From Neoechinorhynchus agilis (lineage: Eukaryota; Animalia; Acanthocephala): 64,000 bases of DNA. The translations under genes and the position numbers were made by a program. Where the stretch lies: positions 13,432,784-13,496,783 of the forward strand of contig CM121341.1 in the NCBI GenBank assembly GCA_051530055.1, read 5' to 3'. Below, piece by piece: positions 3,568 to 47,600 of the stretch (within the stretch, counting starts at the first letter, position 1; every line of letters begins with the position of its first letter). Below the pieces are notes generated by a model. It made no database searches. It was not told the origin of the DNA and saw only the letters and a program-made list of their open reading frames with translations.

Positions 3568-4489
3568 AGCAATTGATGATTATTAGTAGTTGAGAGCCAT
3601 TAGAACTTCATATTTTAGTTTAGTACAAAAAATTAAACTTTTTTTGCAAAAAAATTGAAAATTTACAGAATACAGGAGACGTCCGATCGTAAGTTACAGT
3701 ATTTTGTTTTATCAAAAGGATAATTTTTTACTATTTTCCATCTCGATTGGTGGGCGAATGAGAATGTATCGAACTGTTGACCAATGCGAATCATAAACTC
3801 AGCACTGGCATCATGCAAGAATCCCTTAATTGGTCCTCATAATAGTTTTTAAATCATAGAACCCATAGGCCAATCAGATCAAAGTGTAGATTGTATAATC
3901 ATTGGACCACATTATCAAACAATCGGGAAAAATTTCGTTGCCCTTTTTTTGATTATAATAAAACTCTTAAAGTAAAATCCCCTTTTATGCATTTGCGTCT
4001 CACGTATTTAAAAAACTTACAAGCGATCTCTCGAGTGTCGATACGCGATCTAAACAATAATATAAAAGAAGCAAATCCTTAGTTCACCTTTTTCAAGTAA
4101 CTTGGAATCCGAAGTCAACTGGAATCTTAGCAAGAACAAAAGATAACCCTTTTTGATCGTTTGTTGTCTTGGATTATTGTCATCATCGGGACAGTGTTTT
4201 TTTGTTCCTGCGCTCCCAATTCAAAATTTCACTGATTCATTACCAATAGCTTCACATTGGTCCGACAATTTTTATCAATGATAAAAACCTAGAAAATTAT
4301 GTGATCAAGACGTGAATTTATCCGAAATAAATGAGTAAATTTGTGACGCCGAAAACGTCTGTTGCTTTGTATAAAAATCGCTTCAGAAATCATAGTTCTC
4401 CTCATCATTAGTAATAATTGGATTAAAGTGAAGAAGTCATCATTAGCGATTTTTCAATATAAATCAGAGATCGAACTTTATTAAGGACC

Positions 4490-5929: not shown

Positions 5930-7824
5930 ATGCCGGACTATTTGGGTGCTGATCAAAGGAAAGTGAAAGAAGGAGATGCCAACGAGAAACCAGTTCAAGC
6001 TCTCGATGATGACGACATTGAGATTTTAAAGAACTACGGAGCCGGTGTTTACGACGAAGCTCTACGAACAATAGAGACCGATATTCGAACACTTTTGAAG
6101 AAAGTTAATGAGCTTAGTGGGATAAAGGAATCTGACACTGGTCTCGCACATCCGGCTCTTTGGGATCTGGCAGCAGACAAGAATGCCCTGCACGTTGAAC
6201 AGCCTCTTCAAGTGGCACGATGCACTAAAATAGTTCCTGTGACCGATCCAGAAGGTGGGGGCCAACATGGTACTCCCCAGAACCGCTATATCATAAACGT
6301 CAAACAATTCGCCAAATTCGTTGTTGACTTGGCGGATTCTGTAGCGCCCACAGATATCGAAGAAGGAATGCGTGTGGGTGTTGATCGTGTCCGATATCAG
6401 ATCCATATTCCTCTTCCGCCTAAAATCGATCCAACGGTTACAATGATGCAAGTAGAGGAAAAACCGGATGTTACCTATAATGACGTCGGTGGATGTAAAG
6501 AACAAATAGATCGGTAGCTGTGCCATATTAGACTTTTTCATCGTTCTCATACTTGTTCAAAAGTGATTTTTTCTTCATAGATAAAATAATAAGAATTTAG
6601 TGTCACTTCCAAAATTTGCGTTTTTTCCCAACGATTTATCCATCCAACAGTTTCAATGTCATTTATTTTTTCAACAAAATTTAAATTGCTTTATATTCTT
6701 ATTTGTTTTTGGAGAAGAACCGAGAATTTAGTGTCACTTCCGAAATTTGCATTTTTCCCCCACGATGATACTGTTTCGTACTCAGTGAACGCCTTCTTAT
6801 ATGAAACTTTTTTCCGATTAAGATTTGCTCGGTTAGGCTCAGAAGTATGTTTTTTCAGCGCACTTATTGTTGGCTTTTATAAAATTCTTTACTAGGGTAT
6901 TAAAAATAATTTTTGTCTACTGTGGTTTGAAAAGTATTTGGTTTCTTGGTTAATCGTTTTTATTGGCAGAATCGAAAAGAAAAAACACAAAGTGTCCCCT
7001 GACTGCGAATTTCGTCCAACTTTAGGAAATTTATTTAAGAGTTTAGTTCTTTTGCGTGACACAGCTTCCAAATAGTTCGTCTCAAAGAAGTCGTAGAGAT
7101 GCCTTTGCTTGAACCGGAAAAGTTCGTTCAATTAGGCATTGAGCCACCAAAAGGTGTTCTACTTTATGGGCCTCCTGGAACTGGCAAGACGTTATGCGCT
7201 CGAGCAGTTGCCAATCGAACAGACGCCTGTTTTATCCGAGTAATTGGTAGTGAATTGGTTCAAAAATATGTCGGAGAAGGCGCTCGAATGGTTCGTGAGT
7301 TATTCCAAATGGCACGAGCCAAAAAAGCTTGTATTATCTTCTTTGACGAAATCGATGCTGTCGGTGGAGCTCGGTTTGATGATGGTGCAGGAAGCGACAA
7401 TGAAGTCCAGAGAACGATGCTCGAATTGATCAATCAATTGGACGGATTCGATCCCCGAGGAAACATAAAGGTTCTAATGGCGACCAATAGACCTGACACC
7501 CTTGATCCAGCACTCGTCCGACCTGGTCGTCTCGACCGGAAAGTTGAATTCAATTTGCCTGATCTTCAGGGCCGCAAACAAATATTTGAGATTCATACCA
7601 ACTCAATGAATGTGGAGAAGTCGATCAGGTACGATTTGTTGGCTCGTCTGTGTCCTAACAGCACTGGAGCTGAAATAAGATCCGTTTGCATCGAAGCAGG
7701 CATGTTCGCTATCAGAGCCAGACGAAAAGTCGCTAACGAGAAGGATTTCTTGGAAGCCGTAAATAAAGTCATAAAAGCCTATGCGAAATTCAGTTCAACT
7801 CCTAAATATATGACTTATAATTAG
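5930..7824 (+). CDS. PSMC2: 26S proteasome AAA-ATPase subunit RPT1 (regulatory subunit 7); two coding segments 5930-6513 and ~7065/7080-7824
   Basis: [12 protein letters not shown]-terminus, [14 protein letters not shown], Walker A GPPGTGKT, Walker B IFFDEID, C-terminus [12 protein letters not shown]. Confidence 0.97.
6513..7069. mobile_element. Non-autonomous TIR element (Mutator-like MITE) inserted in the PSMC2 CDS, apparently acting as its intron
   Basis: TIRs GGTAGCTGTGCCA / TGACACAGCTTCC (11/13 match). Flanking 9-bp direct repeats AAATAGATC (6504-6512) and AAATAGTTC (7070-7078). Internal repeated block GAATTTAGTGTCACTTCC at ~6594 and ~6724. Confidence 0.85.
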
Positions 7825-9294
7825 ATTTATACGGACATTAAAAAACACGGTATGCCATTGACGTCATTCATCGAGGTGGGACTGCAATCTTTTAGTTACG
7901 ATTTTAGATCTTCACGGCCGCTCCCTCCCCTTTCGAAATATCGCTCAATAAAATTTGTTTTATCCGGTGGATTACGATCACCACATTTCTCTCAGCTCAA
8001 AGGGTTATGATCTATCACAATGCCCGAATAAACAAATTTTATTGAGATTTCTCGATGACTTCTGTGTTATTAATATGCGAATAGTGGAGGTATTCACCGC
8101 CTGCATTGTTTAGAGTGCGGATCTTTAATTTATATCCTATATCGATTTCGATCATTTGCGTAACCTTCTATTTATGGTGCAAAAATGATCATAAAGTTTT
8201 TCTGGTGCAAAAAGATGTAGTTTCCATTTGTTTGTTATTTTGTATTGTTGTGAGCGATGAGTTATTTTCGATCAATTCTTTTAGCTTAGCCAAGCAAGTG
8301 CACCTTTAATTTCACACGGGAGATCGGTATGGCTTGTATTGATTGTCATGCTAGCAATGGAACGATCTCCTATAACATTATTGATCATTTATGCATCTAC
8401 TTTGAACGATAACAAATAAGATCACCAATGATCGTATATAATTTTTTAGAACTTACATTTTTTACTCATTTTTACTCGTATATGAAATTGATCTTACCAA
8501 GATTTTGTTTTTAATAGTGTACCATTTTCAATTACTTATCTGTCGATTTATGATCCTTTCAAAGTTTAATTATCACAATCTCCAAACATTTTTTGCGTTT
8601 GAAGATTGAATTTTTTATGTTTGTTCATTGCGTAAAAATTAAAAGAATTCCGCACGCTCATCACCGGAAACTTAAAGCCGTGCGTGATCTTGACATGTGA
8701 TTTCAAAAATGCAGTCAACACGGTTCACCGAGCAGATTTGCTCTAAGTAGTTAGGGATCCCGCATCAGAAGCATTTCGCTATTTCGTTAATGCCTATGGG
8801 ACTTCAACTCATTTGTTGTTCAATAATCACGTTTTGTGGTCAGAAAGAGGAGTTCAACAAGGGGATCCTTTGGGCCCATTGGCCTTCTCACTCGCATTCA
8901 ATCCAGTCGCGCACTCTCTCCAGTCCAGCTGCGCGATTTGGAGACGCTCGTGAAGAAGATGGCGAAAATTGGCATTTAATTGAATGCTGCGAAATGCGAG
9001 ATTTTAGATATGAACGTGGAAGAAGAAGCGTTCAGGCAAACTATCGTGAAAGATTATCAGAACCTGGCCCCGGGATAGAATCGATCACTGTAGACCGGTT
9101 GATTCTTCTAGAATGTTGCATTTTTGGCTTTAATGCAGAAGCAGAGATTGCCAATCTTCAACCGCAACTTTAGGTGCTGTGCGAACGAGTTGATGAATTA
9201 TCTTCAAACGAGGCTTTGTTCCTGATAAAGAGCACACTCTTTATTCCAGAATTGCTGTATGAGCTGCGCACAGCTCCTTTTCTTAGACACAAGG

Positions 9295-9429
9295 TGTGAT
9301 ATCGATTAGTTTCGACTACATCATAAATGTAATTATATTATCGATTACTAACCGTTATCGTTCGTTGTACCATGAAGCGTTTTCGCGGTTCCGTTAGCTA
9401 AATAAAACCACGTTTTCGGTTCTACAACA
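9295..9429 (+). repeat. 5' LTR of Gypsy element
   Basis: TGTGATATCG...TCTACAACA, AATAAA at 9401-9406. Confidence 0.95.
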
Positions 9430-12400
9430 ATTTATTTAGCTAACGATGGATCATCAGGAAATTCTGTCGACAAAAACTGGCTCAGTCGAAGACAGTCAAC
9501 CGCAAACTGTGCATCCTAGTTTCAAAACCGAACGGTTGAATATTCTACCTCACCATGAGGACACAAGAAAAAAAGTTCCGACTTTGGAAACGGAATTTCG
9601 AGTACACAATAAAGAAACTTGCGGACAAGAGTGATAGGATGGAAATACTCCGTGCTCACATAGGACCTGATGTTTATGAGCTTATTGAACAATTCGAAGA
9701 CTTTGATCAGGCTTTTGAGACGCTTGAGAAACTCTTTGTGAAGAAGCCTAACGAAATTCTATCTAGGCACTTGTTATCGACAAGACGACAGTTGGAAAAG
9801 TAGAGCATAGATCAATACGTTCAAGCATTAGGGATGATTGCCAAAGACTGTTCCTTCAAATCCGTCAGCACCGAAGAAGCAAAATCAGATTATATACGAG
9901 ACTTTTATCGCAGGTCTCCAATCAAACAGAATACGTCAGAGATTGCTCGAATGTAAAGAACTGACACTGTGCAAAGCGATTGAGATCGCCAAGAACGTTC
10001 AGTATGCGTTTGAAAGTATGGAGCACTTCGGCAATCATAGTAGCGATCCTCTTAGATGCATGAAAGTACAAATCGACGAAAAACAACCATAGAAACGATC
10101 CGTTTAAATGCAGGCGAATAAGAACTGACGAATATGACGATAAATCGTAATAATTGAACGCGATAAATAGAGAACATGATGGCAGGCTCGAAGAATTCAA
10201 TCGTACGTCAGTTTGCTATTTTTGTGGGAGGAAACGACATCCTCGCAAATTATGCCCCGCCGCCGAAGTGCAGTGCTATAAGTGTCAAAAACTCGGACAC
10301 TTCGCGAGAATGTGTCGGTCAAAAAAGCTAACAACGCAAACTTGTCTTAGGTCTACTTAGCTGCTACTAAAAAGGATAAGAGTTCGATAAAGGATTGTTC
10401 TCCCATGATTCCGGTATTGATACAAGATGTAACCTTCTCTGCTTTGCTTGATACCGGGAGTTCCCTCAATTTCATCGATTTCAATGCTATCGAGAAGCTA
10501 CTGTTATCTATAGAACCGTCCTACTCAAACGTTTCGTTAGCCTCTGGTAACACTACAAGGAGAACTCTGGGCAAGGTTAGGGCCGATATTCGATACGACG
10601 GAACGATGTACAGTCGCGTGGAACTATACGTGTTGACTGATATTTGCAGAGACGTAGTTCTTGGATTGCCGTTTTTAAGACTGCACAGAGAGTTCCGCTT
10701 GAGAATGTCAGGCAGTGAGTCGCCAATCGAACTGAATCTAGCTGCGTTACTTATTCCTGTACTTGATCAAGAGTCGACAACAAAATCTGATTTTGCGCCT
10801 TGTTTGTTCAATAATCTTTCCGCCGACTGTAAACCGATCGCAACTCGATCCCGATGCTACAATCAACGCGACATCATCTTTATTAAATCCGAGATCGATC
10901 GTATGCTTAAAGATGGTATAATCGAAAAATCCTATTCACCATGGAGGGCACATGTCCTCGTGGTTAACAACGAAAATGGAAAAAAGAGACTCGTTGTAGA
11001 CTTTAGCCAAACTATTAACAAATTCACTTATCTAGATGCTTACCCTCTTCCACGTATCGAAACGATCGTCAACAGAATAGCAACAAATAAGGTGTTTAGC
11101 CGGTTAGACTTAAAAGATGCATATTATCAAGTATCAATTTCCCCTCATGAGAGAGATTATACCTCTTTTGAAGCGTGCGGTGAGCTCTACCGCTTTACAA
11201 AAATCCCGATGGGCGTTACCAATGGGGTATCCGAATTTCAGAGGTATATGAATAATATCATCGAAGCTAACAATTTATCAAATACATATGCATATCTCGA
11301 CGATGTCATTATTTGCGGACAAACGAAGAGCGAGCATGATAAAAACTTGCGACAATTTCGAGATATTGCTGCCAAGAAAGGATTCAAATTCAATAACGAT
11401 AAAAGCGTATATGGGGTAGAACGAATTCTGGTACTTGGTTACGAAATTGGTAACGGCCAACTAAGACCGGACCCAAATCGTCTCAAGCCTCTAAATGACA
11501 TAGTACTACCCACCAACAAAGCATCTCTACAACGCTTGATGGGATTTTTTGCCTATTATAGTAAATGAATCCCGAACTACTCTACAAGGATTCAACCGCT
11601 GGTGTGCAAAAATTTGGATTTTCTCTGCGAACAAACTGCAATATTGATTGATACCTTAAAAAAAGACATCAAAAACGCTGTTATGCATAGCATAGATGAG
11701 GATAAGCGATTCGCACTCGAAACTGGTGTTTCTGAAAGAGCAATTGGAGCCGCTCTTTTCTAGGATGGGCTACCTGTCGCATTTTTTTCCAAAACACTGA
11801 ATAAACATGAAAAACGATATCACATAGTGGAAAAGGAGGCGTACGCACTTATCGAGGCAATAAAACATTGGCGGTACTACTTAGCAATCCGTCCGTTCGT
11901 CGTAATTACGGATCAACGATGGAGGCTGGAACTTTCAAGTTATACTTGTACACTAGAGTATCGAGCTGGAGCTTCTAATCTAGCTGCGGATGTACTATCA
12001 CGCGATTCATGTGCGAGCGTATCCTCTATTCTAACTCAGATCCACGACGTTCACCGAAAATTAGGACATCCAGTTGTCACCAGGATGCTCCACTACATCA
12101 AACAAAATAATCTTCCTTATTCTACGGAGGAAATAAGAAAAGTAACGGCATCTTGTTCGGTTGCTGCCGAATAAAACAAAGATTTTTCAAATCTTCTGAT
12201 CTACATTTGATCAAAGCCACCAAACCATTCGAACGAATATCTGTGGATTTTAAAGGTCCATTACCGTCCACAGCAAGCGGTCCGCGGTATTTATTAGTCC
12301 CCGTAGACGAATATTCGCGGTTCCCAATCGCATTTGCTTGCACAGACTGCTAAACTGAAACCGTTAAATTATGTCTATCACGAATCTTTGCAATTTTCAG

Positions 12401-13109
12401 ATGTCCTGATTACGTCCACTCTGACCGCAGAGCTTCTTTCACCTGCAAGGATATTCGAGAATGGCTAAAAGCACAGAACGTTTGCCTCAGTCACACGACT
12501 GCGTTCCACGCGCAAGGCAACGGTCAGCGTGAACGCTACAATGGCACAGTGTGGAAAACCATCCAGCTCTTGCTTGCAGACCAAGATCTTCCTTTAAATA
12601 AATGGCCCCAGGTCCTCCATGAGGCACTTTCGAAAATACGAACACTTCTCTGCACCAGTACGGGGCAAACGCCTCATGAACGAATATTCAATTATCCAAG
12701 AAGGAGTATGGCATCCAGGCCACCACCAAGTTGGATTGTATCAAGTGATAAGGCATACCTCAAGAATCTGAACAGAAAGTCCAAGTACGAGAATGAAGCG
12801 GATGAAGTAACTCTAATAAGTGGAGGCGAAAAGCATTCGTTGATCCAATACGCTGATGGACGACAAGGCGTCGTTTCAACCCAACGTCTAGCCCCGTATG
12901 GGTCGGATATCGCTCAAACGACTGGTGATGACGTACTTTAATCTCAAACTACTGAATCAAGATCTAAGCACAATAGTACTGAAAAACCGGAACGCGGCAC
13001 TCAGGATGACTATACTGGATTGGATTCGGATTCTAGTCGAATGGGCTCGAAGTATATAGTCAGACGGTCTTGCCGGAGACCAGGGAAACAATCGAACACG
13101 ATGGAAGAT

Positions 13110-13244
13110 TGTGATATCGATTAGTTTCGACTACATCACAAATGTAATTATATTATCGATTACTAACCGTTATCGTTCGTTGTACTATGAAACGTTTTCG
13201 CGGTTCCGTTAGCTAAATAAAACCACGTTTTCGGTTCTACAACA
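13110..13244 (+). repeat. 3' LTR of Gypsy element
   Basis: 132/135 identical to the 5' LTR; followed by TSD CAAGG. Confidence 0.95.
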
Positions 13245-14395
13245 CAAGGATAAGCTAGCAAAATTAGACGAGACGGTGAAAACCTCTCTCGAGAAAATTT
13301 TAAATACTCAGCTGTCGGACGAGGCCTGGCGTCAAGCGTCCTTGCCTGTGTCGTCCGGGGGTTTTGGTATCCGAAAAGCAGCCGATATTTCTCTGCCAGC
13401 TTATTTGGGATCGTACGAAGCAAGCCGCAAAGTAGTTAAATCCGTTCTTGGCGAGACTTACGCTTTGAATGAAGATTTTGCGGAGGCGCTTAATCTTTGG
13501 AGTGGAGATTCAGGCAACGAGCAGGTACCCGTCAATGGTTGCAAACAATCAGTTTGCGACTCACCCCTGGTTGCGAGAATTCACAACGCTTTAATTTCAG
13601 ATTCCTGTGACCTGGTGAACCGAACTCGATTGACGGCAGTCTCTACAAGAAAATCAAGTGCTTGGCTCAACGCTATATCAATCGCTTTCGTGCGTACCCT
13701 TTTCTCCGACGAGGCAGTAAGGATTGCAGTGTCTCTGAGACTTGGGGTATCAATGCGCACATCCCGTCGCTGCCGTTGCGGTGCGACCGTGGAACGATCG
13801 GGACCCCGTGGTCCCGTCTATCGGCAATCAGGCGGAAGGTACTCACGACACGCCGAAGTGAACGAAATTCCAAGCAGTGTCCTAAATACTGTGAATACGC
13901 CCAACATCTTAGATCCGAGCAATCTTTGCCGACTTGATGGCAGCCGTATACCGGATGGTATCGCAGTATTCCCATGGCGAGAAGGAAAATGCCTTCTCTG
14001 GGACGCCATTCGCAGCCAGCAACATAAAATTCGCCGTCATTAAACCAGGAGAAGCAGCAACCGCCGCCGAGGAACGCAAAAAGATAAAATACAGTGACCT
14101 GAGTTGAAATCATTATTTTGTTCAATTTGGCGTCGAGACGCTCGGGTCGTTTGGTACCGCGCCGCAATACCTGGTCAAGGAATTGTCTAAGAGATTGAGA
14201 CGAATCACTGGCGATTCGAGATCAGGAGCATTCCTCCTACAAAACATAAGTCTGACTGTGCAACCAGGGAAAGCTGCATCCGTCCTTTCGACCGTTACAC
14301 CACTAAGGCAGTTTAGTAATCCAAAGCGGTGGTATGAATGATTGTTTAATTATTCGGAACTATACATTTATGTGATCTGAGGAAATTTTTCTTAT

Positions 14396-22440: not shown

Positions 22441-22594
22441 TTGAATGGTGGTAAACATAATCACGCGGTTAAAGATTCCTTTACTATTATGAAATATTTC
22501 GAAAGAGGAAACCTCGCCTCACCAGTCTCGCGAAATATTCCCCAATAATAAAGGAATCTTTAACCGCAGGATTATGTTACCCACCACCATTCAA
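22441..22594. mobile_element. ~154-bp foldback/MITE-like palindrome
   Basis: TTGAATGGTGG..CATAATC..GCGGTTAAAGATTCCTTTA pairs with TAAAGGAATCTTTAACCGC..GATTATG..CCACCATTCAA. Confidence 0.8.
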
Positions 22595-23264
22595 TATTTA
22601 CCACACCGAAGGATCTTCGTGATATTATTGATATATTTTGTTTTAGTAAAGGCGAAATAAAGAAAATTTTAATATTTCGTCTTCAAAGTATTAGTCTACT
22701 TCAGAATTATAAGTTTTACGGACAAAATATTAAAATTACTTTATTTCGCATTGACTAACCAAAATCTTTTGCTAAAGTGATCCTTGAAACTGAAAAATAC
22801 GGATTTTCCACAAGCCTGTGAATTATAGATAACAAAAATGTTATCAGAAGCTCTGCATTCCACCCCTCCGATCAACGATGCAAAAATACTGAATTTCTGT
22901 TCATTGGTGGGAGTTCTTATCAAAAAATTAGTCTTGTCTCTCGGAAAACTACTCAAGTATGGAAAACAATATTATATTTCAGTTAGTTTTTATTGCATTA
23001 TTTGCTGGACATTCGGGAGATAAAAATGATTAAGCCTTTGATATTTCCAACCCAAAAGGGGAATCGCGCAAAGTTATCAAGACATCTTTCATTGAGTCGA
23101 GAATACGTTTCATCTAAGTTAATCTAAGATGACATTAAAAAAAGGACGATTATTTCACAGCATTATACATTCCACCAGATTTTCCCGCTTTCCTCTTTGA
23201 TGGAGAAAATAATGCTGAGTTTCTTAGATGTTTGACTAAAAGAAAGACTGAAAAAGTCCCGTTG

Positions 23265-25140: not shown

Positions 25141-25269
25141 ATTTATACACAAAAGCTACCCTCCTGGTTGTTATAATATATGCCTGAACTAGACCTGAAC
25201 TAGGTTTTATTGAGCCAACGAAACGAAATAACAAAACGAACGTGCGCACACTTGAAACCGCCACTATCG

Positions 25270-25807
25270 ATCAGTCGATTGTGACGCTCAATATCACACT
25301 GGTTATGTGGACCGAAACATGCGTGGTACAAGAAGCCTATTTAGAACTCCAAATATGATGACAAGGTGGAAAAGATAGAAGTGCTAAACGCCAATCATGG
25401 ATATGCGAGTATGTACATGGCTTATAAAGAATGTTTCAACTAAGAGCCTCGTCCCTTATCCTGATTAAGAACAAACGTCGAACAATGAAGCATCTTCAAA
25501 GGAGACATGAAGATGACGATGAAGACGGTCTAAATAAAGAACCGAATTACATCACACAAGGACATACTCACGATCAGATCGACGAGATAACCAGAAGACA
25601 ATCGAAAAGAATTAGAAGACCGTCCCGATACCTAGTGGAAAACTACGATTTCGGAGGGGGAGAACGACGTAAAAAGTCAATGTTAAAATAATCGATCTGC
25701 GCGCATTGAACGCTAGCATATTAGGTTACGTTATTCCTTTCTCAATGTTTTCGCACGGCCACCGACAAAGCTTCAAATAAACATTGTCGAGGATGCAAAT
25801 CCTCAAC
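25270..25807 (+). mobile_element. Gypsy 3' remnant (post-integrase region, polypurine tract, ~143-bp 3' LTR)
   Basis: NSKYDDKVEKIEVLNANHGYA matches the pol C-terminus of the other Gypsy copies. RRQSKRIRRPSRY, then PPT GGAGGGGGAGAA, then a putative LTR 25665-25807 ending AATAAA...CA. Confidence 0.65.
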
Positions 25808-25869: not shown

Positions 25870-28800
25870 GAAAATTATGTCTGCAAGATGACGGCGATAC
25901 CAGTATCAACAAAGGAATCTACTTGGTCGAGATTCCTCAAACCATGGCTTGATACGAAGAAGGAAGATAATATTACTAGAATCAAATCAACCTCTGGAAC
26001 GGAACCCTAAAAATGGTCTTTGTTAATAAAGAATATATGGACGACTATTCGTCATTTGTCAAAAATCACAATGAGGGAAAGCACTATTCGCTACAGGTGC
26101 TCACGAATCGTTCGACCTTCATTGCTCATAATATCGGTTGTTTGACGTCCAATGAAAGTATCAAAGAATTCGAGGATAAGTTTCATGTCAAATTCAAATT
26201 CCATTTCAAATCCAAAAAACAGCCAAACCTATTCCTGTAGGTGTCGTAGAAGCTGACATGGATCAAGTACAAGTGATATGTGCAAAACGATGGATTTTCC
26301 AATGTATGGAAATTTCCTTCTCCAAAGACACAACAACCGAAGCAAATTATACTTTTCCGCAATGCAACATCTGTCTACAATGGGGTCATTGGTGCCGGAA
26401 TTGTCCCAGCAAAATTCAATAATGCTGCTTCTGCTCAGAACTCCATCATATGTCAGTCTGCAACAACAAGATTGTCAAGTGCGGAAATTGTGGTGGTCCT
26501 CATAGGAGTTATTTTAAAGGATGCCGCTGCTTTAAGGAATATGTAAACGCTTGTAGAGCGGGTACATCGGGTGCTAGCAACAAAAACTAGATTCCTACGA
26601 TGGTATCTAAAACCGTGGTCCAGGAGACTCCTAAGGCCGCTGCTGATAACGGTCGAAGCATCTTGAATGAGAATATAATATGTCAGAGAATCTTTGAGAA
26701 AGTATTGGAGGAAGTGTCGCACCGAATAACAATGCTCTTCAATAATATGCAGAACCAACTAGCTGAACATATTCACAAGCTACTTACCTTGATACAACCA
26801 GCAACGCCCAACCAGTTCGCTTCAGTCTCGGATTGCAACCCGAACAATGGTGTCAAGATGGTCTCTGCACAACCTAAAGGTAAGCGGGGTTTGCCAAAGG
26901 CCGTGACAAAGTGAACAAGAAAGCTCCACGCAGTGCTGATAATGATGTCCCAGCCAGTAGAATCATTACTAGCGATTCTGATGCACATATAGAGCCCATT
27001 TCCATCGAATGATGCTCAGTGGGACCTCTCCAGCACGCCTAAATCTTCACTGCCTTCAGTGGAGCTCCAATTTTTTCGATTACATTAACCAGGATTTTAT
27101 TTGCTTCCAAGAAGTAAAGAAAGCAGCCTTCGAATTTAATAATTTATTACCTACTTCAGTTTTGATGAAATACGACGTTTTCCCTACTTTTCCGTTAAAC
27201 CCTCATTCCTCTGGCCTATTGTCTCTATTCAAGAAAAAGTTATGCGTCTCTCTTGTTCAAAGTTATGTAAATGAGAACTTATCTTTCGCTCTATTCGAGA
27301 TGAAAGGAAAAGCTGGAGGAAACTTTTTAATAGGAAATGTGTATGTTCGCCCTAATTTAATCCATAAATCCACAACCAAGGACATTCTTCAACACATTCT
27401 TGGCATTGGGAACATTCTCTTGTTCGAGGATTTTAATGATCCGTCCGGTAAATGGACCCGGGCTGTGGCCAATCGTGATGGCACACACGAATTCATCTGT
27501 CTTATTCAACCTACTTTTGACAGGCTCCATAACAATTCTCATTCCTTCTTGGATGGTTGTTTCGCCCCATTGGATCGACGCGTGACAATATCCCTCGCCA
27601 AACAGACGTCGATTGCGGAAATTTGATTCCGTGATATGTTGACATGGAATATTACGGACGACCTGTCATTATCCCGAAAATATCGCTTCTTTCCCCTGAA
27701 TGTAGCCTTCTTCAATTTCGCAATCAAGCGTACAATGCCGAATCATAGTACCCTTCCGGCGTGGAATCATCTAATTTCTAAAATGTCCAATATATTTTTA
27801 TCAGTGCCTAATTATTCTGTAACTGGTAGGGTAACCTTGAATTATTTGCGATATTGTGCGGCTCAAGCAAAGAAAGCCATTCTTTTACAGGATGGCGCGT
27901 CTAAGCGTATTTGGACGCGAAAATGCTGGGCTTGCAATTATGGGCTTCATTTAGCCGTTCATCAGCGGATCATTAAGCGTCTTTCATCTTCCACTAAATC
28001 TTTCTGGTGCATTCTAAAAAAACTCCAAATATGTTAGGTGGAGAGTCAGAGCGGCTCGTTGGATTCGAGACACCTCTGACAAATCAGTGGTTAATGAGAT
28101 TATTGAGAAATTATCGTTTGGTGCTGGCTTAGTGCCTAATGGTAACTGGCTGAAGTTGCCTCTGCTGCGATCCCTAAATAATGGAGACTTGACTTCGAAT
28201 GATTTGCTAAGGGCTTCGGACAAATCCGTCAAGATGTCTACGAATAATTTCTCGGCGCCCTCGAAATGCTTTAAATTTATTGATCAATCAATAAAACCAG
28301 CAATTATTTCCTGCAATCTATGGGCATCTAGGGACGAATGGGAAAAAATTAACACATCACGCCGTATCCTCCTGGTTAAAGGCAAAAAACATACAGTTAC
28401 TTCCCCATCTGACCCGAGGCCTATCTCAATACAAAATTCTCTGGTATCGTTATATGACAAGGTACTCGCTGACTACCTCATGGAATTTTGTGTGGAGAAG
28501 GACATCATCTCCTCAAACTGTCATGGTTTCTTCGAGGGTAGGTCGGTCATTTCGGCCGTTAGGGATATCTATTCTGCTCTTTCCCAAAACCCATGCAAAT
28601 ACAAATGCCTAGTTTCTTTTGATTTCTCGGCGGCCTGTGACAATATCAACCTGCAGTTTGTGTTGAGTTATATGTATTTCCTCAATTTTCCTAACGATAT
28701 TCTTGCCCGCCTGAGGGATATACTTAGTTCAAAATCCTTTTACTTCGAGGACGACACGGACGGCAGTTTTCTTCCCAACTAACACCGCTATCGCCAATAT

Positions 28801-41208: not shown

Positions 41209-41357
41209 ATTATTGTTTAGGTTATCACCCGGTAAATAATTTTTTACTAAAGACGTTTCGAACCTCGTCGGGTTCATCATCAGTTTGTTAGTATTCGACG
41301 ATATTCGAAACGTCTTTAGTAAAAGATTATTTACCGGGATATAAACTAAATAATAAT
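41209..41357. mobile_element. ~150-bp foldback/MITE-like palindrome just downstream of the GID8-like stop codon
   Basis: CCCGGTAAATAATTTTTTACTAAAGACGTTTCGAA pairs with TTCGAAACGTCTTTAGTAAAAGATTATTTACCGGG. Confidence 0.82.
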
Positions 41358-42290: not shown

Positions 42291-44720
42291 TGTGGTGAAG
42301 CCGGAACAACGCGTTTTAATCAACTTGTAACTTTGCTACAAAAATGTACACAAAAAACCACACACACGCGAGCACCACATTAACAATCGATACACGCCAT
42401 CACGCATTTTACGTCATTTTCCCCATCTTTGTTTTTTTTTCTTTTTTTTCCGATTGTTTTATTGCGGATACTTCAGCGGCACCTTTTTAATTCTTCTTGA
42501 TCAGCGCAAAAGTGGAGGTTCTTTCAGCTCTTCCGTAATAGAGCCTCCACTTGGTCGGTCATGGTCTGAGTGAGTTGAGAGTATTTCGTCTGCTTGCGAA
42601 TCATCTTCTTCTTCCCTCGGTTTGTCGTTCTCAGCCGTTCGATTCTACGCTATGCATCTTTCGGATTTAGTTAAGTTCGGAATTGCGCTCGGTAATCGAC
42701 TTAAATCCCTCGTGGATACTGCCGATTCAATACCATTCGGGTAACGAATATGCGCATAGGACGGATTGGCTTCCAAAAGTTCCACTTCCTGAACCAAAGG
42801 GTCAAACTTGCTCCTTACGAATTTCCTCAGGAATACGGGGCCAGGCTTTACAAGCCAATGTGGCAATGCTGTCCCCAATCCCGAACGTCGCGGGAAGGTG
42901 AAGAAGCGTTTGTGCGGAGTCGCATTTGAAGTTCGAACAAGCAGCGATCGAATCGAATGCATTGCGACAGGCAAAACTTCCTCCCATCTGATCAGGTTCA
43001 TATTTCTAGTTTTGAGTGCTAGGCAGACAGCTTTCCATATCGTTCCATTAAACTTTTCGATTTGACCATTGCCCATCGGGTGGTATGGAGTCGTCTTACT
43101 AACTGACACACCACTCTTCCTAAGGAAATCCTGCGACACCACATAGCGAAAATATCTCAGTTAAACACCGAATGACGGTGGTACTCTTCATATCGGCACG
43201 AGGTATAGCAAAGGGAAACCTGCTGTATCCGTCGACCGCAGTGAACAAATATTTGTTATTAGTTGAGGAGGGCAGAGGTCCTTTAAAGTCAACGGACAAG
43301 CGGTCCATTGGTTTTATGGCTTGAATGAGCTGATTACGGTCTTTGTCGGACGAGTAAAATTGAGGCTTCAATTCAGCACAAATACGACATTGCGCGCAGA
43401 CTGTTTTAACTTCATTCATTGAAAAAGGGAGATTCTTCGACCGAACATAATGCATGAGCCTAGCCACGCCTGGATGGCATAATTGGTCGGGGATTCGAGA
43501 GAGCATATTTACATCAGTTGTCGTTGCACATACTCGTGAAAACGCATCTGCAGCCCAATTTTGAGGTCCCGGTCGATATCGAATGGTATAACTTAGATCC
43601 GCTAGCTCTATCCCCCATGATAGAATTTTATTGTTTTTTATTTTCGTTCTCTTCCTGTTATCCATCATAAAAGCTACACTACGTTGGTCCGTAACAAGTA
43701 CGAATTTACTCGAAGAAAGTAAATATCTCCACTTCCTTACCGCCTCTATTATAGCCATTGCTTCCTTTTCAACATCGGCGTAATGGGATTCAGTAAGGTT
43801 CAAAATCCTGGACATGAATGCGGCCGGTCGACTGTTTTGACTCAATACTACTGAAATCGCTATGTCGGACGTGTCACACTCTACCGTGAATGGTTGATTG
43901 TCGCCGATCGGTCCCAACGATGCTTTCGCCAATATGCTCTTGAGTTCCTCGAAGGCAGTTACTTCTTCTGCCTTCATTGGGAATTTGCAGCATCCGATGA
44001 GTGGCGCAATTTTGTCCGAGAATCTTTCGATCCATTTCGCAAAATACGCGAACATCCCAACAACACGCCTTAAACTAGAAACAGTGCAAGGAGCAGGGAG
44101 TTACAGTAAGGGTCGCAATCTTTCGGAATCCGGTGAAATAATATTATTAGCGATGCTGTAGCCCAATAGCTCTATCTTCCTTACTGATCGTACTGATTTG
44201 TTCTCGTTTAGTTTCAGATTGCGTCGTTTTGCAGCCGCCAAGAATTTTTGTACATTCGCATCATGTTCTTCTTGGGTGTTCCCAGTAATCGTGACATTGT
44301 CCACATAAGGAAAAACGCAATTTAACTTCTCCTGTGCAATCATGTCATCCATAGCCCGTTGAAATGCAGAAACTCCATTGGTAACCTCAAAGGGAATTCT
44401 TGTAAACTGGTACAGCTTCCCATTGGCTTCGAATGGCAGAGAGTTTATCTTCTTGAATGTTTTTCTTTGATTGGCCCATTGCTCGCCAGTGCCCCTTTTC
44501 CCGCAATTAGTGCAATTCGATTCTTTTGCTGGGCATTTGTATCGTGGGTGGCGTGGCTTCCGGTTCTTCTTTTCTCTCGATAGCAGCTACTGTAAAAAAC
44601 GTCGGACGCAAATAAAGATCTGCATTTCTCTGAGCGCTTTCTAAAGATTTCAATTTTAAAACTGCCTCGCCCAGAGATAGATCGTCCTTTTCTAACAGTC
44701 GTTGTCGTTCCCTCGCTGTA
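42291..44720 (-). mobile_element. Gypsy element 2: 5'-truncated, protease/RT-N deleted, ~126-bp 3' LTR (42291-42416)
   Basis: Gag knuckle CPAKESNCTNCGK fused to FTRIPFEVTNG..YVDN; RNase H VECDTSD..VEKEAMAIIEAV; integrase HPGVARL, LSVDFKGPLP. PPT AAAGATGGGGAAAA precedes TGACGT. Confidence 0.9.
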
Positions 44721-47600
44721 TCGCAATTGCGATTCGTTGAGCGTGACAAAAAGAAAAGGCACTGCTCAAACTGCGATCGAGATGGCCATTGTGCGTTCTC
44801 GAAAAATTGTGAAGCATTTAAGGAATATGTTGTGTGGGCGAGACTGCTTGGATCCAAGGGAAATAATTCATCCGACACTCGAGTTGCCCAGAATAGTTGG
44901 AATACGACAAAGTACATACCCATAAGAGGGTCTGTCACAACCATTACAACCATAAAAACATACCCAAGGCAACAACTGGGTACATCCAAAGATGTTAATA
45001 ATCTACGAACGACTTATGATGACACCTTGGAAAAGAAGTTTGCTGATTTCTCCGCTAAAATCCTCGACATGGTCGATCTACGAATCACCGCGACCATTCA
45101 GGGTCTTGAGAGGAGACTATCTGCCCAGTTAAACGGTCTCATCGAAACTCTCGACAAAATTCAAAGATATTCAGATCGCGACCGGGGTAGCTCCAGCAGC
45201 CTGCAAACGCAGTCGAGCACTGGTTTCAAGTAGCAACGGTGTAGACGATGTGGATATGTACGAGGCCGAGGAGTTCGTGAGCAACATCATAAGCGAGCAA
45301 ACCCAGGTTTGTGTTGACGGGTCCAAAATTTCATCAAAGGTAGGTCTCAATGGAATTGAGAATTGCGCAGTGGAACGCAGGCGGGCTTCTGGGTATTCCC
45401 GGCCTTTTGTCTGAAGCACAGAGAAGTGATATTACTTTTATCCAAGAAACTAAGTCGCTGTACTCTCTTAACAACCTTCCGAATAGTTTTAATATTTTAT
45501 CTAGTGAATATTCTTTATTTTGTACAAAACCCCTTTTAAACCACTCTAAAGGCTTATTATCCATTTTAACCCTAATTTGATTTGTCTTGCGCTTTATTTT
45601 CAATACGTATCTTGGGGAGGAAATTGCTCTTAGGTAATTTCTATATTAAACCTAGGAAAATACACCTCACTCATAATAAAGATCTTATAAAAATGTTTTA
45701 GCATCCGGAATTGACTTTTGCTTTGGAGATTTCAACGACCCTTCTCACAAATGGATAAAGGCCATTTTACGTTCGGATGATACCCATGACCTTATTGTCC
45801 CTGCGGATCCGATGTTTACCGACGGCAGGTCTCATTCTTTTCTAGATTTGTGTCTTGCTCGAAGTAACTCATTCGTTAAAACCAAACTGGTTTCTCAATG
45901 ATCAATTTTCCGTATTGCTGGACACGATATCTTAGTGTGGGAATTGGGACGGAATATTCTTTTGTGCCGTAAATTTAAATTTAGTACACTTAACATCAAC
46001 ATCTTTAACGCTGCCATAAATTTTGCTTTCACTTTTGGCGCTTTTGATCAGCTCAAGGGCTTAAATGAATTTGTGGTCACAGCTAGTGACTCGATTTTAA
46101 CAACGGCCACGAGAAGTATCGGGTCGAAAATGTTGAAACCAAAAGTACTCTCCCTGTATTGCAGGCAACTTTTTATGGCTAAGGCAATCGATGATCGGGA
46201 GTCGATTAAGATTTGGTCCTCTTTATACTGGCCCTGTAGAACTCGATTTCAAATAGCTTGCGACAGTAAGCGAATTAGCCATTTTATGCTTTGTTCCTCT
46301 CCTTGGCGGCATGTCGTTGCACCAAAAAGATTTTGTCCGTGGAAAAGGGCTGCAGCGAGTTGGATTAAAACCTCGGGGTGGGACGATGTTATTAGCGCTC
46401 TTTGCATTGAACATTGCAATGAAGCAAGTAGTGTCCCGGTCTTTAATAATTTTATTCAAATTAAGCCTCGTCGTTTTGATTTACGCCGGAATGATTTTAT
46501 CATTTGGTGGGGTTCAAGAAATCTTACATCGAACAATGGTTCTTCCCCCTGTTTCAAAGTAAAAAAAGGTAAGGCTGTTTCTTCACCTAGTGATGTGAGA
46601 CCTATCTCCATTCAGAATTCGTTTGTTTCCATATACGAGCGAGTTTTGGCGAAAATTATAATGGATTTTTCTTTTAAACATCACCTTATTGATGAGCGCT
46701 GTCATGGTTTCCTCTCGGGGAAATCTGTTCATACTGCGATTGCTCAAATAATACATAACCTTTTTAGCCACCCCTAGTCAACAAACATTCTTATCTCTTT
46801 CGATATTTCTAAAGCTTTTGATAATATTGACACTGCTTTTATGGTGAATATTTTAAGATTTTTTTGTTTTCCTTTTAATATAATTGCTAGGGTGAACAAC
46901 ATCCTGAAATGTAAACGATTTTTCTTTGCAGCTGAGGTTCCTCAAGGCTCACCTTTATCACCCATACTTTTTGCTTGACAACTCAATTTATGATTAAAAA
47001 TTGTACGATTTGTCGTAGCGTCACTATGTACGCCGATGACCTTACTGTAGTTATCAAAGAGTTAAATTATTTGAAAGCACGTGCGAAACTGGCTGCCGTG
47101 CTGAACTTTTTAAAATCCCACCTACCTCAAATGGGTCTCTCTTTGAATGAAAAGAAGACGAAATTTTTAATCAAATCTAAATCTCGAGTGGGCAAGAAGC
47201 ACATCCAGGATTATATCAAGGATTTTTTTGGGTTAGATTTCGACCCTGCTTATAAGAAGCTTGATATTTTAAGTTATACTTTCACTAATAACCTTTCGCC
47301 CGCCTCCGATATACACAAGATGCAAAAACTTTTAAAGACAGCCAGAGTTAAGGTGAGACGTGCCGCGCGTATTGGGCTTAGCGCCAAGATATGCAAAGTA
47401 ATATGGTGCTCTTGGGCTATTTCAGGCCTAGTTTTTTATTCCGGAGGAAGGCCTCCAGAACAACGCCTAAAGTTCCTCTGTGTATTCTTGAAAATCCTGT
47501 CGAGACTACCCTTTGAGTGGATTTCCTCAGCAGACTGGGCCAACAAATCCATGCAGTGGATCGGATTATGACTTCCAAAAACGGATAGTAACTAAATTTA
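44720..47600 (+). mobile_element. APE-type LINE family B, copy 2 (ORF1 end plus ORF2, decayed)
   Basis: CSNCDRDGHCAFSKNCEAFKEYV knuckle; MELRIAQWNAGG..FIQETK APE; RT with YADD at ~47028. The 3' boundary is approximate. Confidence 0.9.

What the first reader, a model, noticed from the sequence alone, without database searches (positions are those of the whole stretch)
9392..9448. Gypsy element with no tRNA PBS: the whole 16-nt leader is the perfect complement of its own LTR poly(A)-signal region
Seen: the 5' LTR ends at 9429 (CA). After one A comes TTTATTTAGCTAACG (9431-9445) and then the gag ATG (9446). That 15-mer is the exact reverse complement of CGTTAGCTAAATAAA (9392-9406) inside the LTR, which contains the AATAAA, giving a 15-bp stem with a 24-nt loop. 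There is no room for, and no sign of, a TGG-type tRNA PBS. Established: Tf1 of Schizosaccharomyces pombe primes minus-strand synthesis from its own 5' end annealed to the PBS, with RNase H cleavage; HIV-1 hides its 5' AAUAAA in a hairpin. Inference: this 135-bp-LTR animal Gypsy self-primes (the 3' end of the paired LTR strand points straight into the LTR end). The same stem, which can form only at the 5' LTR, would also suppress premature polyadenylation and sit directly on the start codon, so one stem could serve three functions.
Basis: partly seen in the sequence, partly recalled or inferred. Interest (0 to 1): 0.85.

Follow-up and report, generated by a model that had tools for sequence, protein, structure and literature searches.

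The report
Self-priming compact Gypsy retrotransposon lineage
A decayed 4-kb Gypsy retrotransposon in an acanthocephalan worm genome, like dozens of diverged animal relatives, has no tRNA primer site; the sequence at that position is an exact complement of the poly(A)-signal region of its own LTR, which points to Tf1-style self-primed reverse transcription outside the group where that mechanism is known.

Summary
A TG..CA LTR pair (135 nt, 98% identical, 5-bp target duplication CAAGG) bounds a 3950-bp gag-PR-RT-RH-IN element. One A follows the 5' LTR, and then 9431-9445 is the perfect reverse complement of 9392-9406, whose last six bases are AATAAA. The gag ATG follows at 9446.

This is a family trait. 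In 25 non-redundant relatives (about 36-54% PR-RT identity, several independent datasets) the layout is the same:
- An LTR segment of 10-18 nt ends in a poly(A)-type hexamer.
- A loop of 24-72 nt ends in the LTR's CA.
- One spacer base follows, then a perfectly complementary segment starting TTTA.
- The gag ATG usually lies 0-20 nt further on.

Arm sequences differ between families but always match their own LTR: 12 of 16 pairs show two-sided changes, 0/500 shuffles. Complementarity ends sharply at both borders.

The best reading is Tf1-like self-priming, with the poly(A) signal inside the primer. Integrases lack a chromodomain, so this is not demonstrably the Tf1/sushi group. The transcription start, the poly(A) site and RNase H cleavage are unmapped. 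I found no prior description. I rate it a new variant of a known mechanism, of moderate to high interest.

The parts
9290..9294 (+). Target-site duplication CAAGG, left copy
   Evidence: CAAGG lies directly before the 5' LTR and directly after the 3' LTR.
9295..9429 (+). 5' LTR, 135 nt, TGTGATAT...CTACAACA
   Evidence: family D1. It differs from the 3' LTR at only 3 positions (9324, 9371, 9377), none in the arm or loop.
9392..9406 (+). Proposed self-primer (5' arm) CGTTAGCTAAATAAA; its last six bases 9401-9406 are the poly(A) signal AATAAA
   Evidence: I13, 15/15 complementary to 9431-9445. Relatives carry the same kind of arm, always ending in NNTAAA.
9407..9420 (+). Weak second stem-loop (SL2) ACC-ACGTTTTC-GGT, starting at the first base after the primer
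   Evidence: An RCCU..AGGY hairpin of at least 4 bp starts at loop base 1 in 18/25 relatives (shuffles: mean 11, maximum 18 of 500). It has only 3 bp in this copy.
9407..9430 (+). Loop: the rest of R, then U5, then the one-base spacer A (9430). This is the predicted template of a 24-nt minus-strand strong-stop DNA
   Evidence: Inferred from the geometry of the pairing. The LTR end CA plus one spacer base is seen in 25/25 modules (CAA 21, CAG 3, CAT 1).
9431..9445 (+). Primer-binding site TTTATTTAGCTAACG, complementary to the element's own LTR
   Evidence: The position and the strict Watson-Crick complementarity are conserved across the lineage.
9446..13109 (+). Decayed gag-pol, full length but broken. 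Homology to an intact 1238-aa relative runs in frame 3 (9561-9908), frame 1 (9886-10029), frame 2 (10214-10333, zinc knuckle), frame 1 (10441-12186, PR-RT-RH, with in-frame stops at 11566, 11761 and 12172) and frame 3 (11994-12932, IN)
13100..13109 (+). Candidate polypurine tract GATGGAAGAT, directly before the 3' LTR
   Evidence: Relatives have clearer tracts at this position, for example GGGGGGAGAA and AGGGGAAGAA.
13110..13244 (+). 3' LTR. It carries the same arm at 13207-13221, unpaired there because no complement follows
   Evidence: D1 and I14.
13245..13249 (+). Target-site duplication CAAGG, right copy
25169..25298 (-). Solo LTR of a sister subfamily (TGTGATAT...TATAACA), flanked by the target duplication ACCAG at 25164-25168 and 25299-25303. 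Its arm is CGTTGGCTCAATAAA, followed by SL2 ACCTAGTTCAGGT

Best explanation
The element belongs to a widespread lineage of very compact animal Ty3/Gypsy retrotransposons. They are about 4.0-4.5 kb long, with LTRs of 127-310 nt and often a single gag-pol ORF of about 1200 aa. I propose that they start minus-strand DNA synthesis by self-priming, as Tf1 of S. pombe does, rather than from a tRNA.

Proposed steps:
1. The genomic RNA starts at or very near 9392. Its first 15 nt, which end in AAUAAA, fold back onto 9431-9445, one base beyond the LTR end.
2. The element's RNase H cuts the RNA at the stem-loop junction, after ...UAAA and before the RCC of a small adjacent hairpin (SL2). This leaves a 3'-OH.
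3. RT extends that end leftwards through U5 and the remainder of R, making a very short strong-stop DNA (24 nt here, 24-72 nt in relatives).
4. This DNA jumps to the 3' R, using the stretch between the poly(A) hexamer and the poly(A) site.
5. Plus-strand strong-stop synthesis then copies the RNA primer and so rewrites the binding site in each cycle. That explains why the complementarity is exact, strictly Watson-Crick and sharply bounded.

Because R is so short, the poly(A) signal has to lie inside the primer. A side effect is that the 5' copy of the signal is buried in the duplex, while the 3' copy is free.

Shown: the anatomy, its conservation, the covariation, the position of the complement and the absence of a tRNA-type site. 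Inferred: the transcription start, the cleavage, the priming itself, the poly(A) occlusion and any effect on gag translation.
For: - The 15/15 inverted repeat sits at LTR end +2, well beyond chance.
- The first relative examined has the same layout with unrelated sequence: TTTTCAGTTTATTAAA / TTTAATAAACTGAAAA, with ATG overlapping the last base.
- About 28 of 45 metagenome loci that contain the pre-gag region have the module 810-1000 nt upstream of the PR-RT match. The loci hold 33 module-type perfect hairpins against 0.6 in shuffles.
- In 25 non-redundant modules, stems are 10-18 nt and loops 24-72 nt. The hexamers are AATAAA 12, ATTAAA 7, TTTAAA 2, GTTAAA 2, CATAAA 1 and AGTAAA 1. The bases before the complement are CA plus one base in 25/25.
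- Covariation is strong: 12/16 pairs have two-sided changes, 87 compensatory cells against 23.5 in shuffles, score 0.632 against 0.152 (0/500), and slid controls reach only 33-48% paired.
- Closely related copies differ by a compensated change: CAAGTTGATTAAA / TTTAATCAACTTG in L008 against CAAGTTTATTAAA / TTTAATAAACTTG in L009.
- LTR boundaries confirmed from 3' LTR copies end 0-1 nt before the complement.
- Complementarity stops abruptly. Only 45/150 matches occur in the six positions beyond the outer border, and G.U pairs are not enriched there.
- The adjacent SL2 hairpin does use G.U pairs, which suggests that it is maintained as an RNA structure.
- Intact relatives exist, with ORFs of 1187-1238 aa, LTRs more than 99% identical and clear polypurine tracts.
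- The known mechanism is described for Tf1/sushi elements: self-primer, binding site and extra duplexes (PMC10085805; PMC5006619).
Against: - There is no experimental or transcript evidence. The transcription start and poly(A) site are unmapped, and no contig had a poly(A) tail.
- No TATA box lies at a fixed distance upstream.
- A conserved A-G lies 11-10 nt from the primer's 3' end. This could mark a start site inside the arm, which would leave the outer 1-7 paired bases unexplained.
- The window copy itself is dead.
- Hairpins were found with a perfect Watson-Crick seed of at least 10 nt, so the absence of wobble pairs inside the core is partly by construction.
- About 17 of the 45 loci lack the module at the expected place. 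These may be truncated copies or more distant relatives; this was not resolved.
- The R homology left for the first strand transfer would be short, about 10-25 nt.
Confidence: 0.75

Rival explanations
1. The stem is only a regulatory RNA hairpin. It hides the promoter-proximal poly(A) signal, as the HIV-1 poly(A) hairpin does, and/or gates gag translation or packaging. Reverse transcription would be primed in some other, unidentified way.
For: - The hexamer lies wholly inside the stem in 25/25 modules.
- The stem can form only at the 5' end of the RNA.
- The ATG is within about 9 nt of the stem in many members.
- The fold is stable, z = -4.9.
Against: - A regulatory hairpin has no reason to begin exactly one base after the LTR's CA in every member.
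- No alternative primer site exists in leaders that are only 0-20 nt long.
- Complementarity is strictly Watson-Crick with sharp borders, whereas the neighbouring SL2 tolerates G.U.
- A poly(A) signal 6-18 nt from the cap would probably be inefficient anyway (general knowledge).
- This reading is compatible with self-priming as an added function rather than a replacement for it.
Confidence: 0.12
2. Priming is by the same arm sequence but in trans or from the other end of the RNA. The arm in the 3' R, or in a second packaged RNA, would pair with the binding site. This circularises or dimerises the genome, and the primer end would come from that molecule.
For: - The identical arm is present in the 3' LTR (I14), so it is in the 3' R of every transcript.
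- The very short strong-stop DNA would benefit from having the 3' R held nearby (inference).
Against: - The local hairpin, with a loop of 24-72 nt, is kinetically and thermodynamically favoured.
- The conserved SL2 right at the junction argues for a local structure like the Tf1 fold.
- There are no data that discriminate between the two.
Confidence: 0.06
3. A cellular RNA (a tRNA half, a mitochondrial tRNA or another small RNA) that happens to match TTTATTTAGCTAACG is the primer, and the LTR match is incidental.
For: - Half-tRNA priming exists in copia-type elements (PMC6317226).
- Host tRNAs could not be inspected, since none lies in the window.
Against: - The site differs in sequence between families while always matching that family's own LTR. 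No single cellular RNA could do that.
- It begins TTTA, not TGG.
- The would-be anticodon-loop reading has a pyrimidine where position 37 should be a purine (general knowledge).
- Published tRNA sites of Mag-type and other elements (TGGTGTCAGAAG, TGGTAGCAGAGC, TGGTGACCCTGAAGTA) do not occur in the leader read.
Confidence: 0.02

Closest known systems
Tf1/Tf2 of Schizosaccharomyces pombe and the Tf1/sushi group of chromoviruses (Maggy, Skippy, Cft-1, sushi-ichi and others): self-primed reverse transcription
   Same: - No tRNA site is present.
[quoted passage not shown]
- An additional small helix lies next to the primer duplex.
- The primer length is similar (11 nt in Tf1; 10-18 nt here, with a conserved A-G exactly 11-10 nt from the primer end).
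   Different: - No chromodomain was found in five integrases or C-terminal integrase segments from relatives, so membership of the chromovirus Tf1/sushi clade is not supported.
- The hosts are invertebrate animals.
- The elements are much smaller, with much shorter LTRs.
- The primer always ends in the poly(A) hexamer, so the duplex also buries the 5' poly(A) signal.
- Only one flanking helix (SL2) was seen, not the three-duplex 'pretzel'.
Predicted self-priming plant lineages: Tcn1 (Ty3/gypsy, non-seed plants) and TAR (Ty1/copia) (Neumann et al. 2019, PMC6317226)
   Same: Self-priming is inferred from LTR-leader complementarity in the absence of a tRNA site. This shows the trait has been recognised computationally in several lineages.
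   Different: The hosts and clades differ. Tcn1 is a relative of Tf1/sushi and TAR is copia-type. No poly(A)-signal-in-primer arrangement is described for them in the text read.
Mag lineage of animal Ty3/Gypsy elements (Mag, SURL / Mag C-clade, Steamer, Culex Mag-like families)
   Same: - They share compact size, short LTRs and often a single gag-pol ORF (Culex Mag families are 4.6-5.1 kb with LTRs of 145-197 nt).
- The LTR ends TGTGATAT...CTACAACA fit the Mag C consensus TGTNATRT...AYANAACA (one mismatch, in the 3' motif), and the 135-nt LTR is short like the clade's mean training-set LTR of 174 nt (PMC3601003).
- A conserved AATAAA lies close to the LTR's 3' end.
   Different: - Described Mag-type elements have tRNA sites: Leu, Ser or Arg in Culex and TGGTGTCAGAAG for tRNA-Leu in Steamer.
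- The lineage studied here has none.
HIV-1 5' poly(A) hairpin (from general knowledge; not checked in a paper here)
   Same: The AAUAAA in R is sequestered in a stem at the 5' end of the genomic RNA.
   Different: In HIV-1 the hairpin lies within R and forms at both ends, and the primer is tRNA-Lys3. Here the partner strand is the primer-binding site itself, so the stem exists only at the 5' end.

Membership tests
Ty3/Gypsy (Metaviridae) LTR retrotransposon | LTRs with TG..CA ends, a target-site duplication, and the domain order gag(CCHC)-PR-RT-RH-IN | tested here: met
   LTRs and the 5-bp duplication; zf-CCHC, Asp protease, RVT_1, RT_RNaseH, rve in that order; best solved relative is the Ty3 RT 4OL8, E = 1e-30.
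Self-priming LTR retrotransposons (Tf1 type), as a mechanism | No tRNA-complementary (TGG...) site next to the 5' LTR | tested here: met
   the leader is A + TTTATTTAGCTAACG + ATG. The same holds in 25 relatives.
Self-priming LTR retrotransposons (Tf1 type), as a mechanism | The sequence immediately downstream of the 5' LTR is complementary to a segment of the element's own LTR | tested here: met
   15/15 in the window. The feature is family-wide with covariation.
Self-priming LTR retrotransposons (Tf1 type), as a mechanism | That LTR segment is the 5' end of the genomic RNA | not testable with these tools
   No transcript ends were available. The sharp outer border of complementarity is consistent with it. 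Contig L049 starts exactly at the arm, but its library type is unknown. No TATA box lies at a fixed distance.
Self-priming LTR retrotransposons (Tf1 type), as a mechanism | RNase H cleavage at the end of the duplex releases the primer | not testable with these tools
   There is only indirect support: the junction UAAA | RCC is invariant or nearly so.
Self-priming LTR retrotransposons (Tf1 type), as a mechanism | Extra duplexes flank the primer helix (U5-IR-like stem, 'pretzel') | tested here: inconclusive
   One adjacent hairpin (SL2) is found in 18/25 modules (shuffles: mean 11, maximum 18 of 500). It has only 3 bp in the window copy. A third duplex was not looked for systematically.
Tf1/sushi clade of chromoviruses, as a phylogenetic group | A chromodomain at the integrase C-terminus | tested here: not met
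   No Chromo hit was found in the integrase of L002 at E <= 0.01, nor in the integrase C-terminal parts of L004, L005, L009 and L011 at E <= 0.1. The L083 product also gave none, but its contig ends within that ORF.
Tf1/sushi clade of chromoviruses, as a phylogenetic group | RT-RH-IN groups with Tf1/sushi references in a tree | not tested
Sources name the relatives only generically, as 'opus' or 'gypsy'.
Mag lineage (C-clade / SURL-like) | LTR termini and size typical of the clade | tested here: met
   TGTGATAT matches TGTNATRT and CTACAACA matches AYANAACA in 7 of 8 positions. The LTR is 135 nt against a clade mean of 174 nt.
Mag lineage (C-clade / SURL-like) | A tRNA (Leu/Ser/Arg) primer-binding site, as in described members | tested here: not met
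   Searches compared.
Mag lineage (C-clade / SURL-like) | RT-based phylogenetic grouping with Mag or SURL | not tested
   No reference sequences were available.

The most novel reading that the evidence does not exclude
Self-priming is not confined to the Tf1/sushi chromoviruses. A large, ancient, chromodomain-less lineage of miniature animal Gypsy elements (in cnidarians, flatworms, nematodes, arthropods, molluscs and acanthocephalans) uses it. One 10-18-bp duplex would then act at once as primer and primer-binding site, as an on/off mask of the only poly(A) signal, and as a cap-proximal gate on gag translation, so that a single helix decides whether an RNA is terminated, translated or reverse-transcribed. 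Either self-priming arose at least twice in Ty3/Gypsy elements, or it is the ancestral state from which tRNA priming was derived.
Probability: 0.45. Interest if true: 0.75.

Novelty: new variant of a known kind. Interest (0 to 1): 0.62.

Why it matters
Self-primed reverse transcription is treated in the literature read here as a hallmark of the Tf1/sushi chromoviruses, with predicted cases in two plant lineages. Animal Gypsy surveys routinely look only for tRNA-type sites.

If the reading here holds, several things follow:
- A second, widespread animal lineage would widen the known range of the mechanism.
- It would give a simple sequence signature: NNTAAA-ended arm, loop ending in CA, one base, then TTTA. 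Annotation pipelines could use it for elements now scored as having no primer-binding site.
- It bears on whether hairpin priming is ancestral in LTR elements, an idea raised in PMC3601003.
- The elements are close to a minimal LTR retroelement: about 4 kb, R plus U5 of about 40-90 nt, and a predicted strong-stop DNA as short as 24 nt. That makes them attractive for in vitro study of priming and strand transfer.
- Placing the poly(A) signal inside the primer is a compact solution to the problem of a poly(A) signal repeated at both ends of the RNA.

Tried and rejected
- tRNA genes: ARAGORN found none in the window, so no host tRNA comparison was possible.
- Rfam: no family matched anywhere in the window.
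- Direct evidence for the transcription start and poly(A) site failed. No fetched contig ends in a poly(A) run. Of the Logan contigs, L083 starts 90 nt upstream of the arm, L084 starts within the coding region, L088 starts inside the loop and L090 starts 5 nt upstream of the arm. Library types are unknown.
- Core promoter: no TATA-like motif lies at a fixed distance from the arm. Y-rich..CAG motifs occur upstream at variable positions and were not interpretable.
- Reverse-strand control of the module count: rejected as uninformative, because a perfect hairpin reads the same on both strands.
- Locus L001 (P0007) carries no module and looks rearranged. The 32-bp inverted repeat in L055 was excluded as a different feature.
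- Primary papers could not be read because they are not held: SURL 1991, mag 1990, and Lin & Levin 1998.
- Saci2-like and errantivirus papers were checked and describe tRNA sites, so they are not this lineage.
- Clade placement by naming failed; sources give only generic names.
- Other copies in the window: none apart from one solo LTR. The other Gypsy fragment at 43120-44055 on the minus strand has no LTR pair in the window.
- The third protein-database search, the representative search, structure prediction and covariance models were not used, because they would not have settled the open points (transcription start, cleavage, clade).
Full report
**Observation**

The window contains a complete but decayed LTR retrotransposon at 9295-13244.
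- Its LTRs are 135 nt long (9295-9429 and 13110-13244) and differ at three positions: 9324, 9371 and 9377.
- They begin TGTGATAT and end CTACAACA, and are flanked by a 5-bp target duplication, CAAGG.
- After the 5' LTR comes a single A (9430), then TTTATTTAGCTAACG (9431-9445), then the first ATG (9446).
- That 15-mer is the exact reverse complement of CGTTAGCTAAATAAA (9392-9406) inside the LTR, whose last six bases are AATAAA (I13).

This is not chance.
- The 15-mer with up to two mismatches occurs four times in the window against 0.27 expected.
- Only five perfect hairpins of at least 13 bp with a loop of at most 70 nt exist in 64 kb.
- The RNA fold of 9392-9460 is -18.4 kcal/mol, z = -4.9.

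**The element and its host**

Pfam finds a CCHC zinc knuckle, an aspartic protease, RVT_1, RNase H and an integrase core, in that order. The best solved relative of the RT is Ty3.

Against an intact 1238-aa gag-pol of a relative, the window copy aligns over residues 18-1137. It switches frame at least four times within that alignment. The opening ATG lies in yet another frame from the first aligned segment. It also carries in-frame stops at 11566, 11761 and 12172. It is therefore full length but dead, not internally deleted.

A flanking proteasome Rpt1-like ORF (7099-7824) is 100% identical to a protein of the acanthocephalan Neoechinorhynchus agilis on a 19.4-Mb contig. That species is taken to be the host.

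A solo LTR of a sister subfamily lies at 25169-25298 on the minus strand. It has its own 5-bp duplication, ACCAG, and an arm that differs at two positions, CGTTGGCTCAATAAA.

**Relatives**

The PR-RT ORF has no close protein relatives. The best hits are 46-48% identical (up to 54% at the loci fetched later). Many sit on contigs of about 4 kb. Named hits come from spiders, trematodes, prawns, a sea slug, an anemone, Trichuris, Trichinella and insects.

The first relative examined is L002, a circularly assembled unit of 3961 nt. It has TTTTCAGTTTATTAAA and, 32 nt later, TTTAATAAACTGAAAA, whose last A is the A of the gag ATG. The sequence is unrelated to the window's, but the layout is the same.

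A scan of metagenome contigs with a PR-RT alignment returned 80 loci.
- Of the 45 loci that contain at least 1500 nt upstream of the match, about 28 have a hairpin with at least 12/13 complementarity, 810-1000 nt upstream, just before gag.
- The 5' arm ends in NNTAAA in nearly all of them; in the L003 family the perfect arm stops at ...TTAA.
- Across all loci there are 33 perfect module-type hairpins against 0.6 in shuffled sequence.
- Further examples came from ENA and Logan contigs, including a jellyfish dataset.

**Anatomy of the module**

In 25 non-redundant modules:
- Stems are 10-18 nt (median 14) and loops 24-72 nt (median 43).
- The arm's last six bases are AATAAA (12), ATTAAA (7), TTTAAA (2), GTTAAA (2), CATAAA (1) or AGTAAA (1). 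From general knowledge, this spectrum resembles metazoan poly(A) signals.
- The three bases before the complement are CAA (21), CAG (3) or CAT (1).

Where both LTRs are present, the LTR identity ends 0-1 nt before the complement. So the complement starts one base after the LTR's CA, which is the canonical primer-binding position.

The gag ATG lies -1 to 62 nt after the complement, and within about 9 nt in roughly 60% of cases.

Complete elements have an LTR-to-LTR spacing of 3.8-4.2 kb and LTRs of 127-310 nt. Most show clear polypurine tracts. Several have a single intact ORF of 1187-1238 aa and LTRs more than 99% identical.

**Covariation**

I aligned, without gaps, 16 nt ending at the arm's 3' end, 12 loop bases, and 16 nt starting at the complement, for 24 modules (A2).

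| Measure | Observed | Shuffled |
|---|---|---|
| Cells paired | 93% | 68% |
| Cells with two-sided change | 87 | 23.5 |
| Covariation score | 0.632 | 0.152 (0/500 reach it) |

- 12 of 16 pairs show two-sided changes.
- Sliding the partner by one to three columns drops pairing to 33-48%.
- The invariant columns are TAAA at the arm's 3' end, TTTA at the complement's 5' end, and the LTR's CA.
- Two near-identical copies differ by a compensated change: L008 has ..GTTGATT.. / ..AATCAAC.. and L009 has ..GTTTATT.. / ..AATAAAC...
- Decayed copies show single random mismatches (L006, L015, L060).

Complementarity ends sharply. In the six positions beyond the outer border only 45/150 are Watson-Crick, which is about the chance level. 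G.U pairs make up 5 of the 25 first non-Watson-Crick pairs, so they are not enriched.

A small hairpin, RCCU..AGGY (SL2), begins at the first loop base in 18/25 modules (shuffles: mean 11, maximum 18 of 500). Unlike the main stem, it uses G.U pairs.

One caveat applies: modules were found with a perfect Watson-Crick seed, so the lack of wobble inside the core is partly by construction.

**Mechanism**

The combination of features seen here is the signature described for Tf1-type self-priming:
- no tRNA site;
- an own-LTR complement at the primer-binding position;
- exact and sharply bounded pairing;
- a conserved junction and a neighbouring helix.

In Tf1, the 5' end of the RNA pairs with the binding site and RNase H cuts at the end of the duplex. 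Extra duplexes are also required (PMC10085805; PMC5006619).

Applied here, cleavage after A9406 would give a 3'-OH. Extension from that end would copy 9430 back to 9407, giving a 24-nt strong-stop DNA. The first jump would use the R stretch between the hexamer and the poly(A) site.

Plus-strand strong-stop synthesis would then copy the RNA primer and regenerate the binding site. That accounts for the exactness and the sharp outer border, if the RNA starts at the arm. These steps are inferred and not shown.

The poly(A) signal lies inside the primer because R is so short. As a consequence, the 5' copy is always double-stranded and the 3' copy is free.

**Open points**

- The transcription start is unknown.
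- There is no TATA box at a fixed distance.
- A conserved A-G lies exactly 11-10 nt from the primer end (G in 21/24 modules), while pairing usually runs 1-7 nt further upstream. I cannot explain this.
- Contig L049 begins exactly at its arm, but the library type is unknown.
- About 17 of the 45 loci lack the module at the expected position. They may be truncated or more distant; this was not resolved.

**Comparison with what is known**

In the literature read, self-priming is described as a common feature of the Tf1/sushi chromoviruses. It is also predicted for the plant Tcn1 and TAR lineages.

The integrases or C-terminal integrase segments of five relatives show no chromodomain. The defining domain of chromoviruses is therefore not met.

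In structure the lineage looks Mag-like: compact, short LTRs, often a single ORF. The LTR ends fit the Mag C consensus TGTNATRT..AYANAACA, apart from one position in the 3' motif. However, described Mag-type elements, Steamer and Saci2-like elements have tRNA sites.

Seven full-text searches found no description of self-priming in this lineage. The library is incomplete, and three primary papers were not held.

**Verdict**

- The self-priming interpretation is supported by strong comparative evidence but not demonstrated.
- It is best classed as a new variant of a known mechanism: Tf1-like self-priming in a chromodomain-less, miniature animal Gypsy lineage, with the poly(A) signal built into the primer.
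- Confidence in self-priming is 0.75, and interest is 0.62.

No whole element was printed or assembled at any step. Only LTR-leader segments and coordinate tables were output.

Noticed in passing
window 25164-25303 (minus strand): Solo LTR of a sister subfamily of the same lineage. It is 130 nt (TGTGATAT...TATAACA), flanked by the 5-bp duplication ACCAG. Its arm is CGTTGGCTCAATAAA, followed by the hairpin ACCTAGTTCAGGT. It predicts that full-length members carry TTTATTGAGCCAACG after their 5' LTR.
   Followed up: partly
alignment A2 of 24 modules (window 9396-9397 = A-G): G is conserved exactly 10 nt from the primer's 3' end (21/24), and A is frequent 11 nt from it (15/24). The perfect pairing usually extends 1-7 nt further upstream. 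This may be an Inr-like start site or an ancestral 11-nt primer as in Tf1. It remains unexplained.
   Followed up: partly
L049:1-13 (OFHQ01025464.1); L090:1-19 (Logan ERR1529707): One contig begins exactly at the first base of its 5' arm, and another begins 5 nt upstream of its arm. If these are transcript assemblies they would mark the transcription start, but the library types are unknown.
   Followed up: no
window 7944-7960 / 8030-8046: A perfect 17-bp inverted repeat (CTCAATAAAATTTGTTT) with a 69-nt loop, just 3' of the proteasome Rpt1-like ORF. It places AATAAA on both strands, so it may be a shared bidirectional poly(A) region.
   Followed up: no
window 22465-22567, 22665-22737 and 41242-41324: Three further perfect inverted repeats (19, 13 and 21 bp; loops of 65, 47 and 41 nt) of unknown nature, possibly small foldback or MITE-like elements.
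   Followed up: no
window 49740-51506: Interleaved direct repeats (300 nt at 100% identity, spaced 1127 nt; 234 nt at 99% identity, spaced 639 nt) in a stretch with a GC skew of 0.46. Tandem Repeats Finder reports no array.
   Followed up: partly
window 27009-28782 (+), 46975-47571 (+), 43120-44055 (-): Other retroelement remains: a non-LTR element (endonuclease and RT), a second RT fragment, and an unrelated Gypsy RH-IN fragment with no LTR pair in the window. Host genes in the window include Tudor, SMC, CTLH, fibrillarin-like and MORN proteins, with long exons (a compact genome).
   Followed up: partly
L003 versus L005 (WLWD01 contigs), module near 3571-3655: In this family the helix runs on past the 13-nt perfect core. 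It is 17 nt perfect in L003 and has one mismatch in L005, and it overlaps the gag ATG. Some members may therefore use primers of about 19-20 nt.
   Followed up: no
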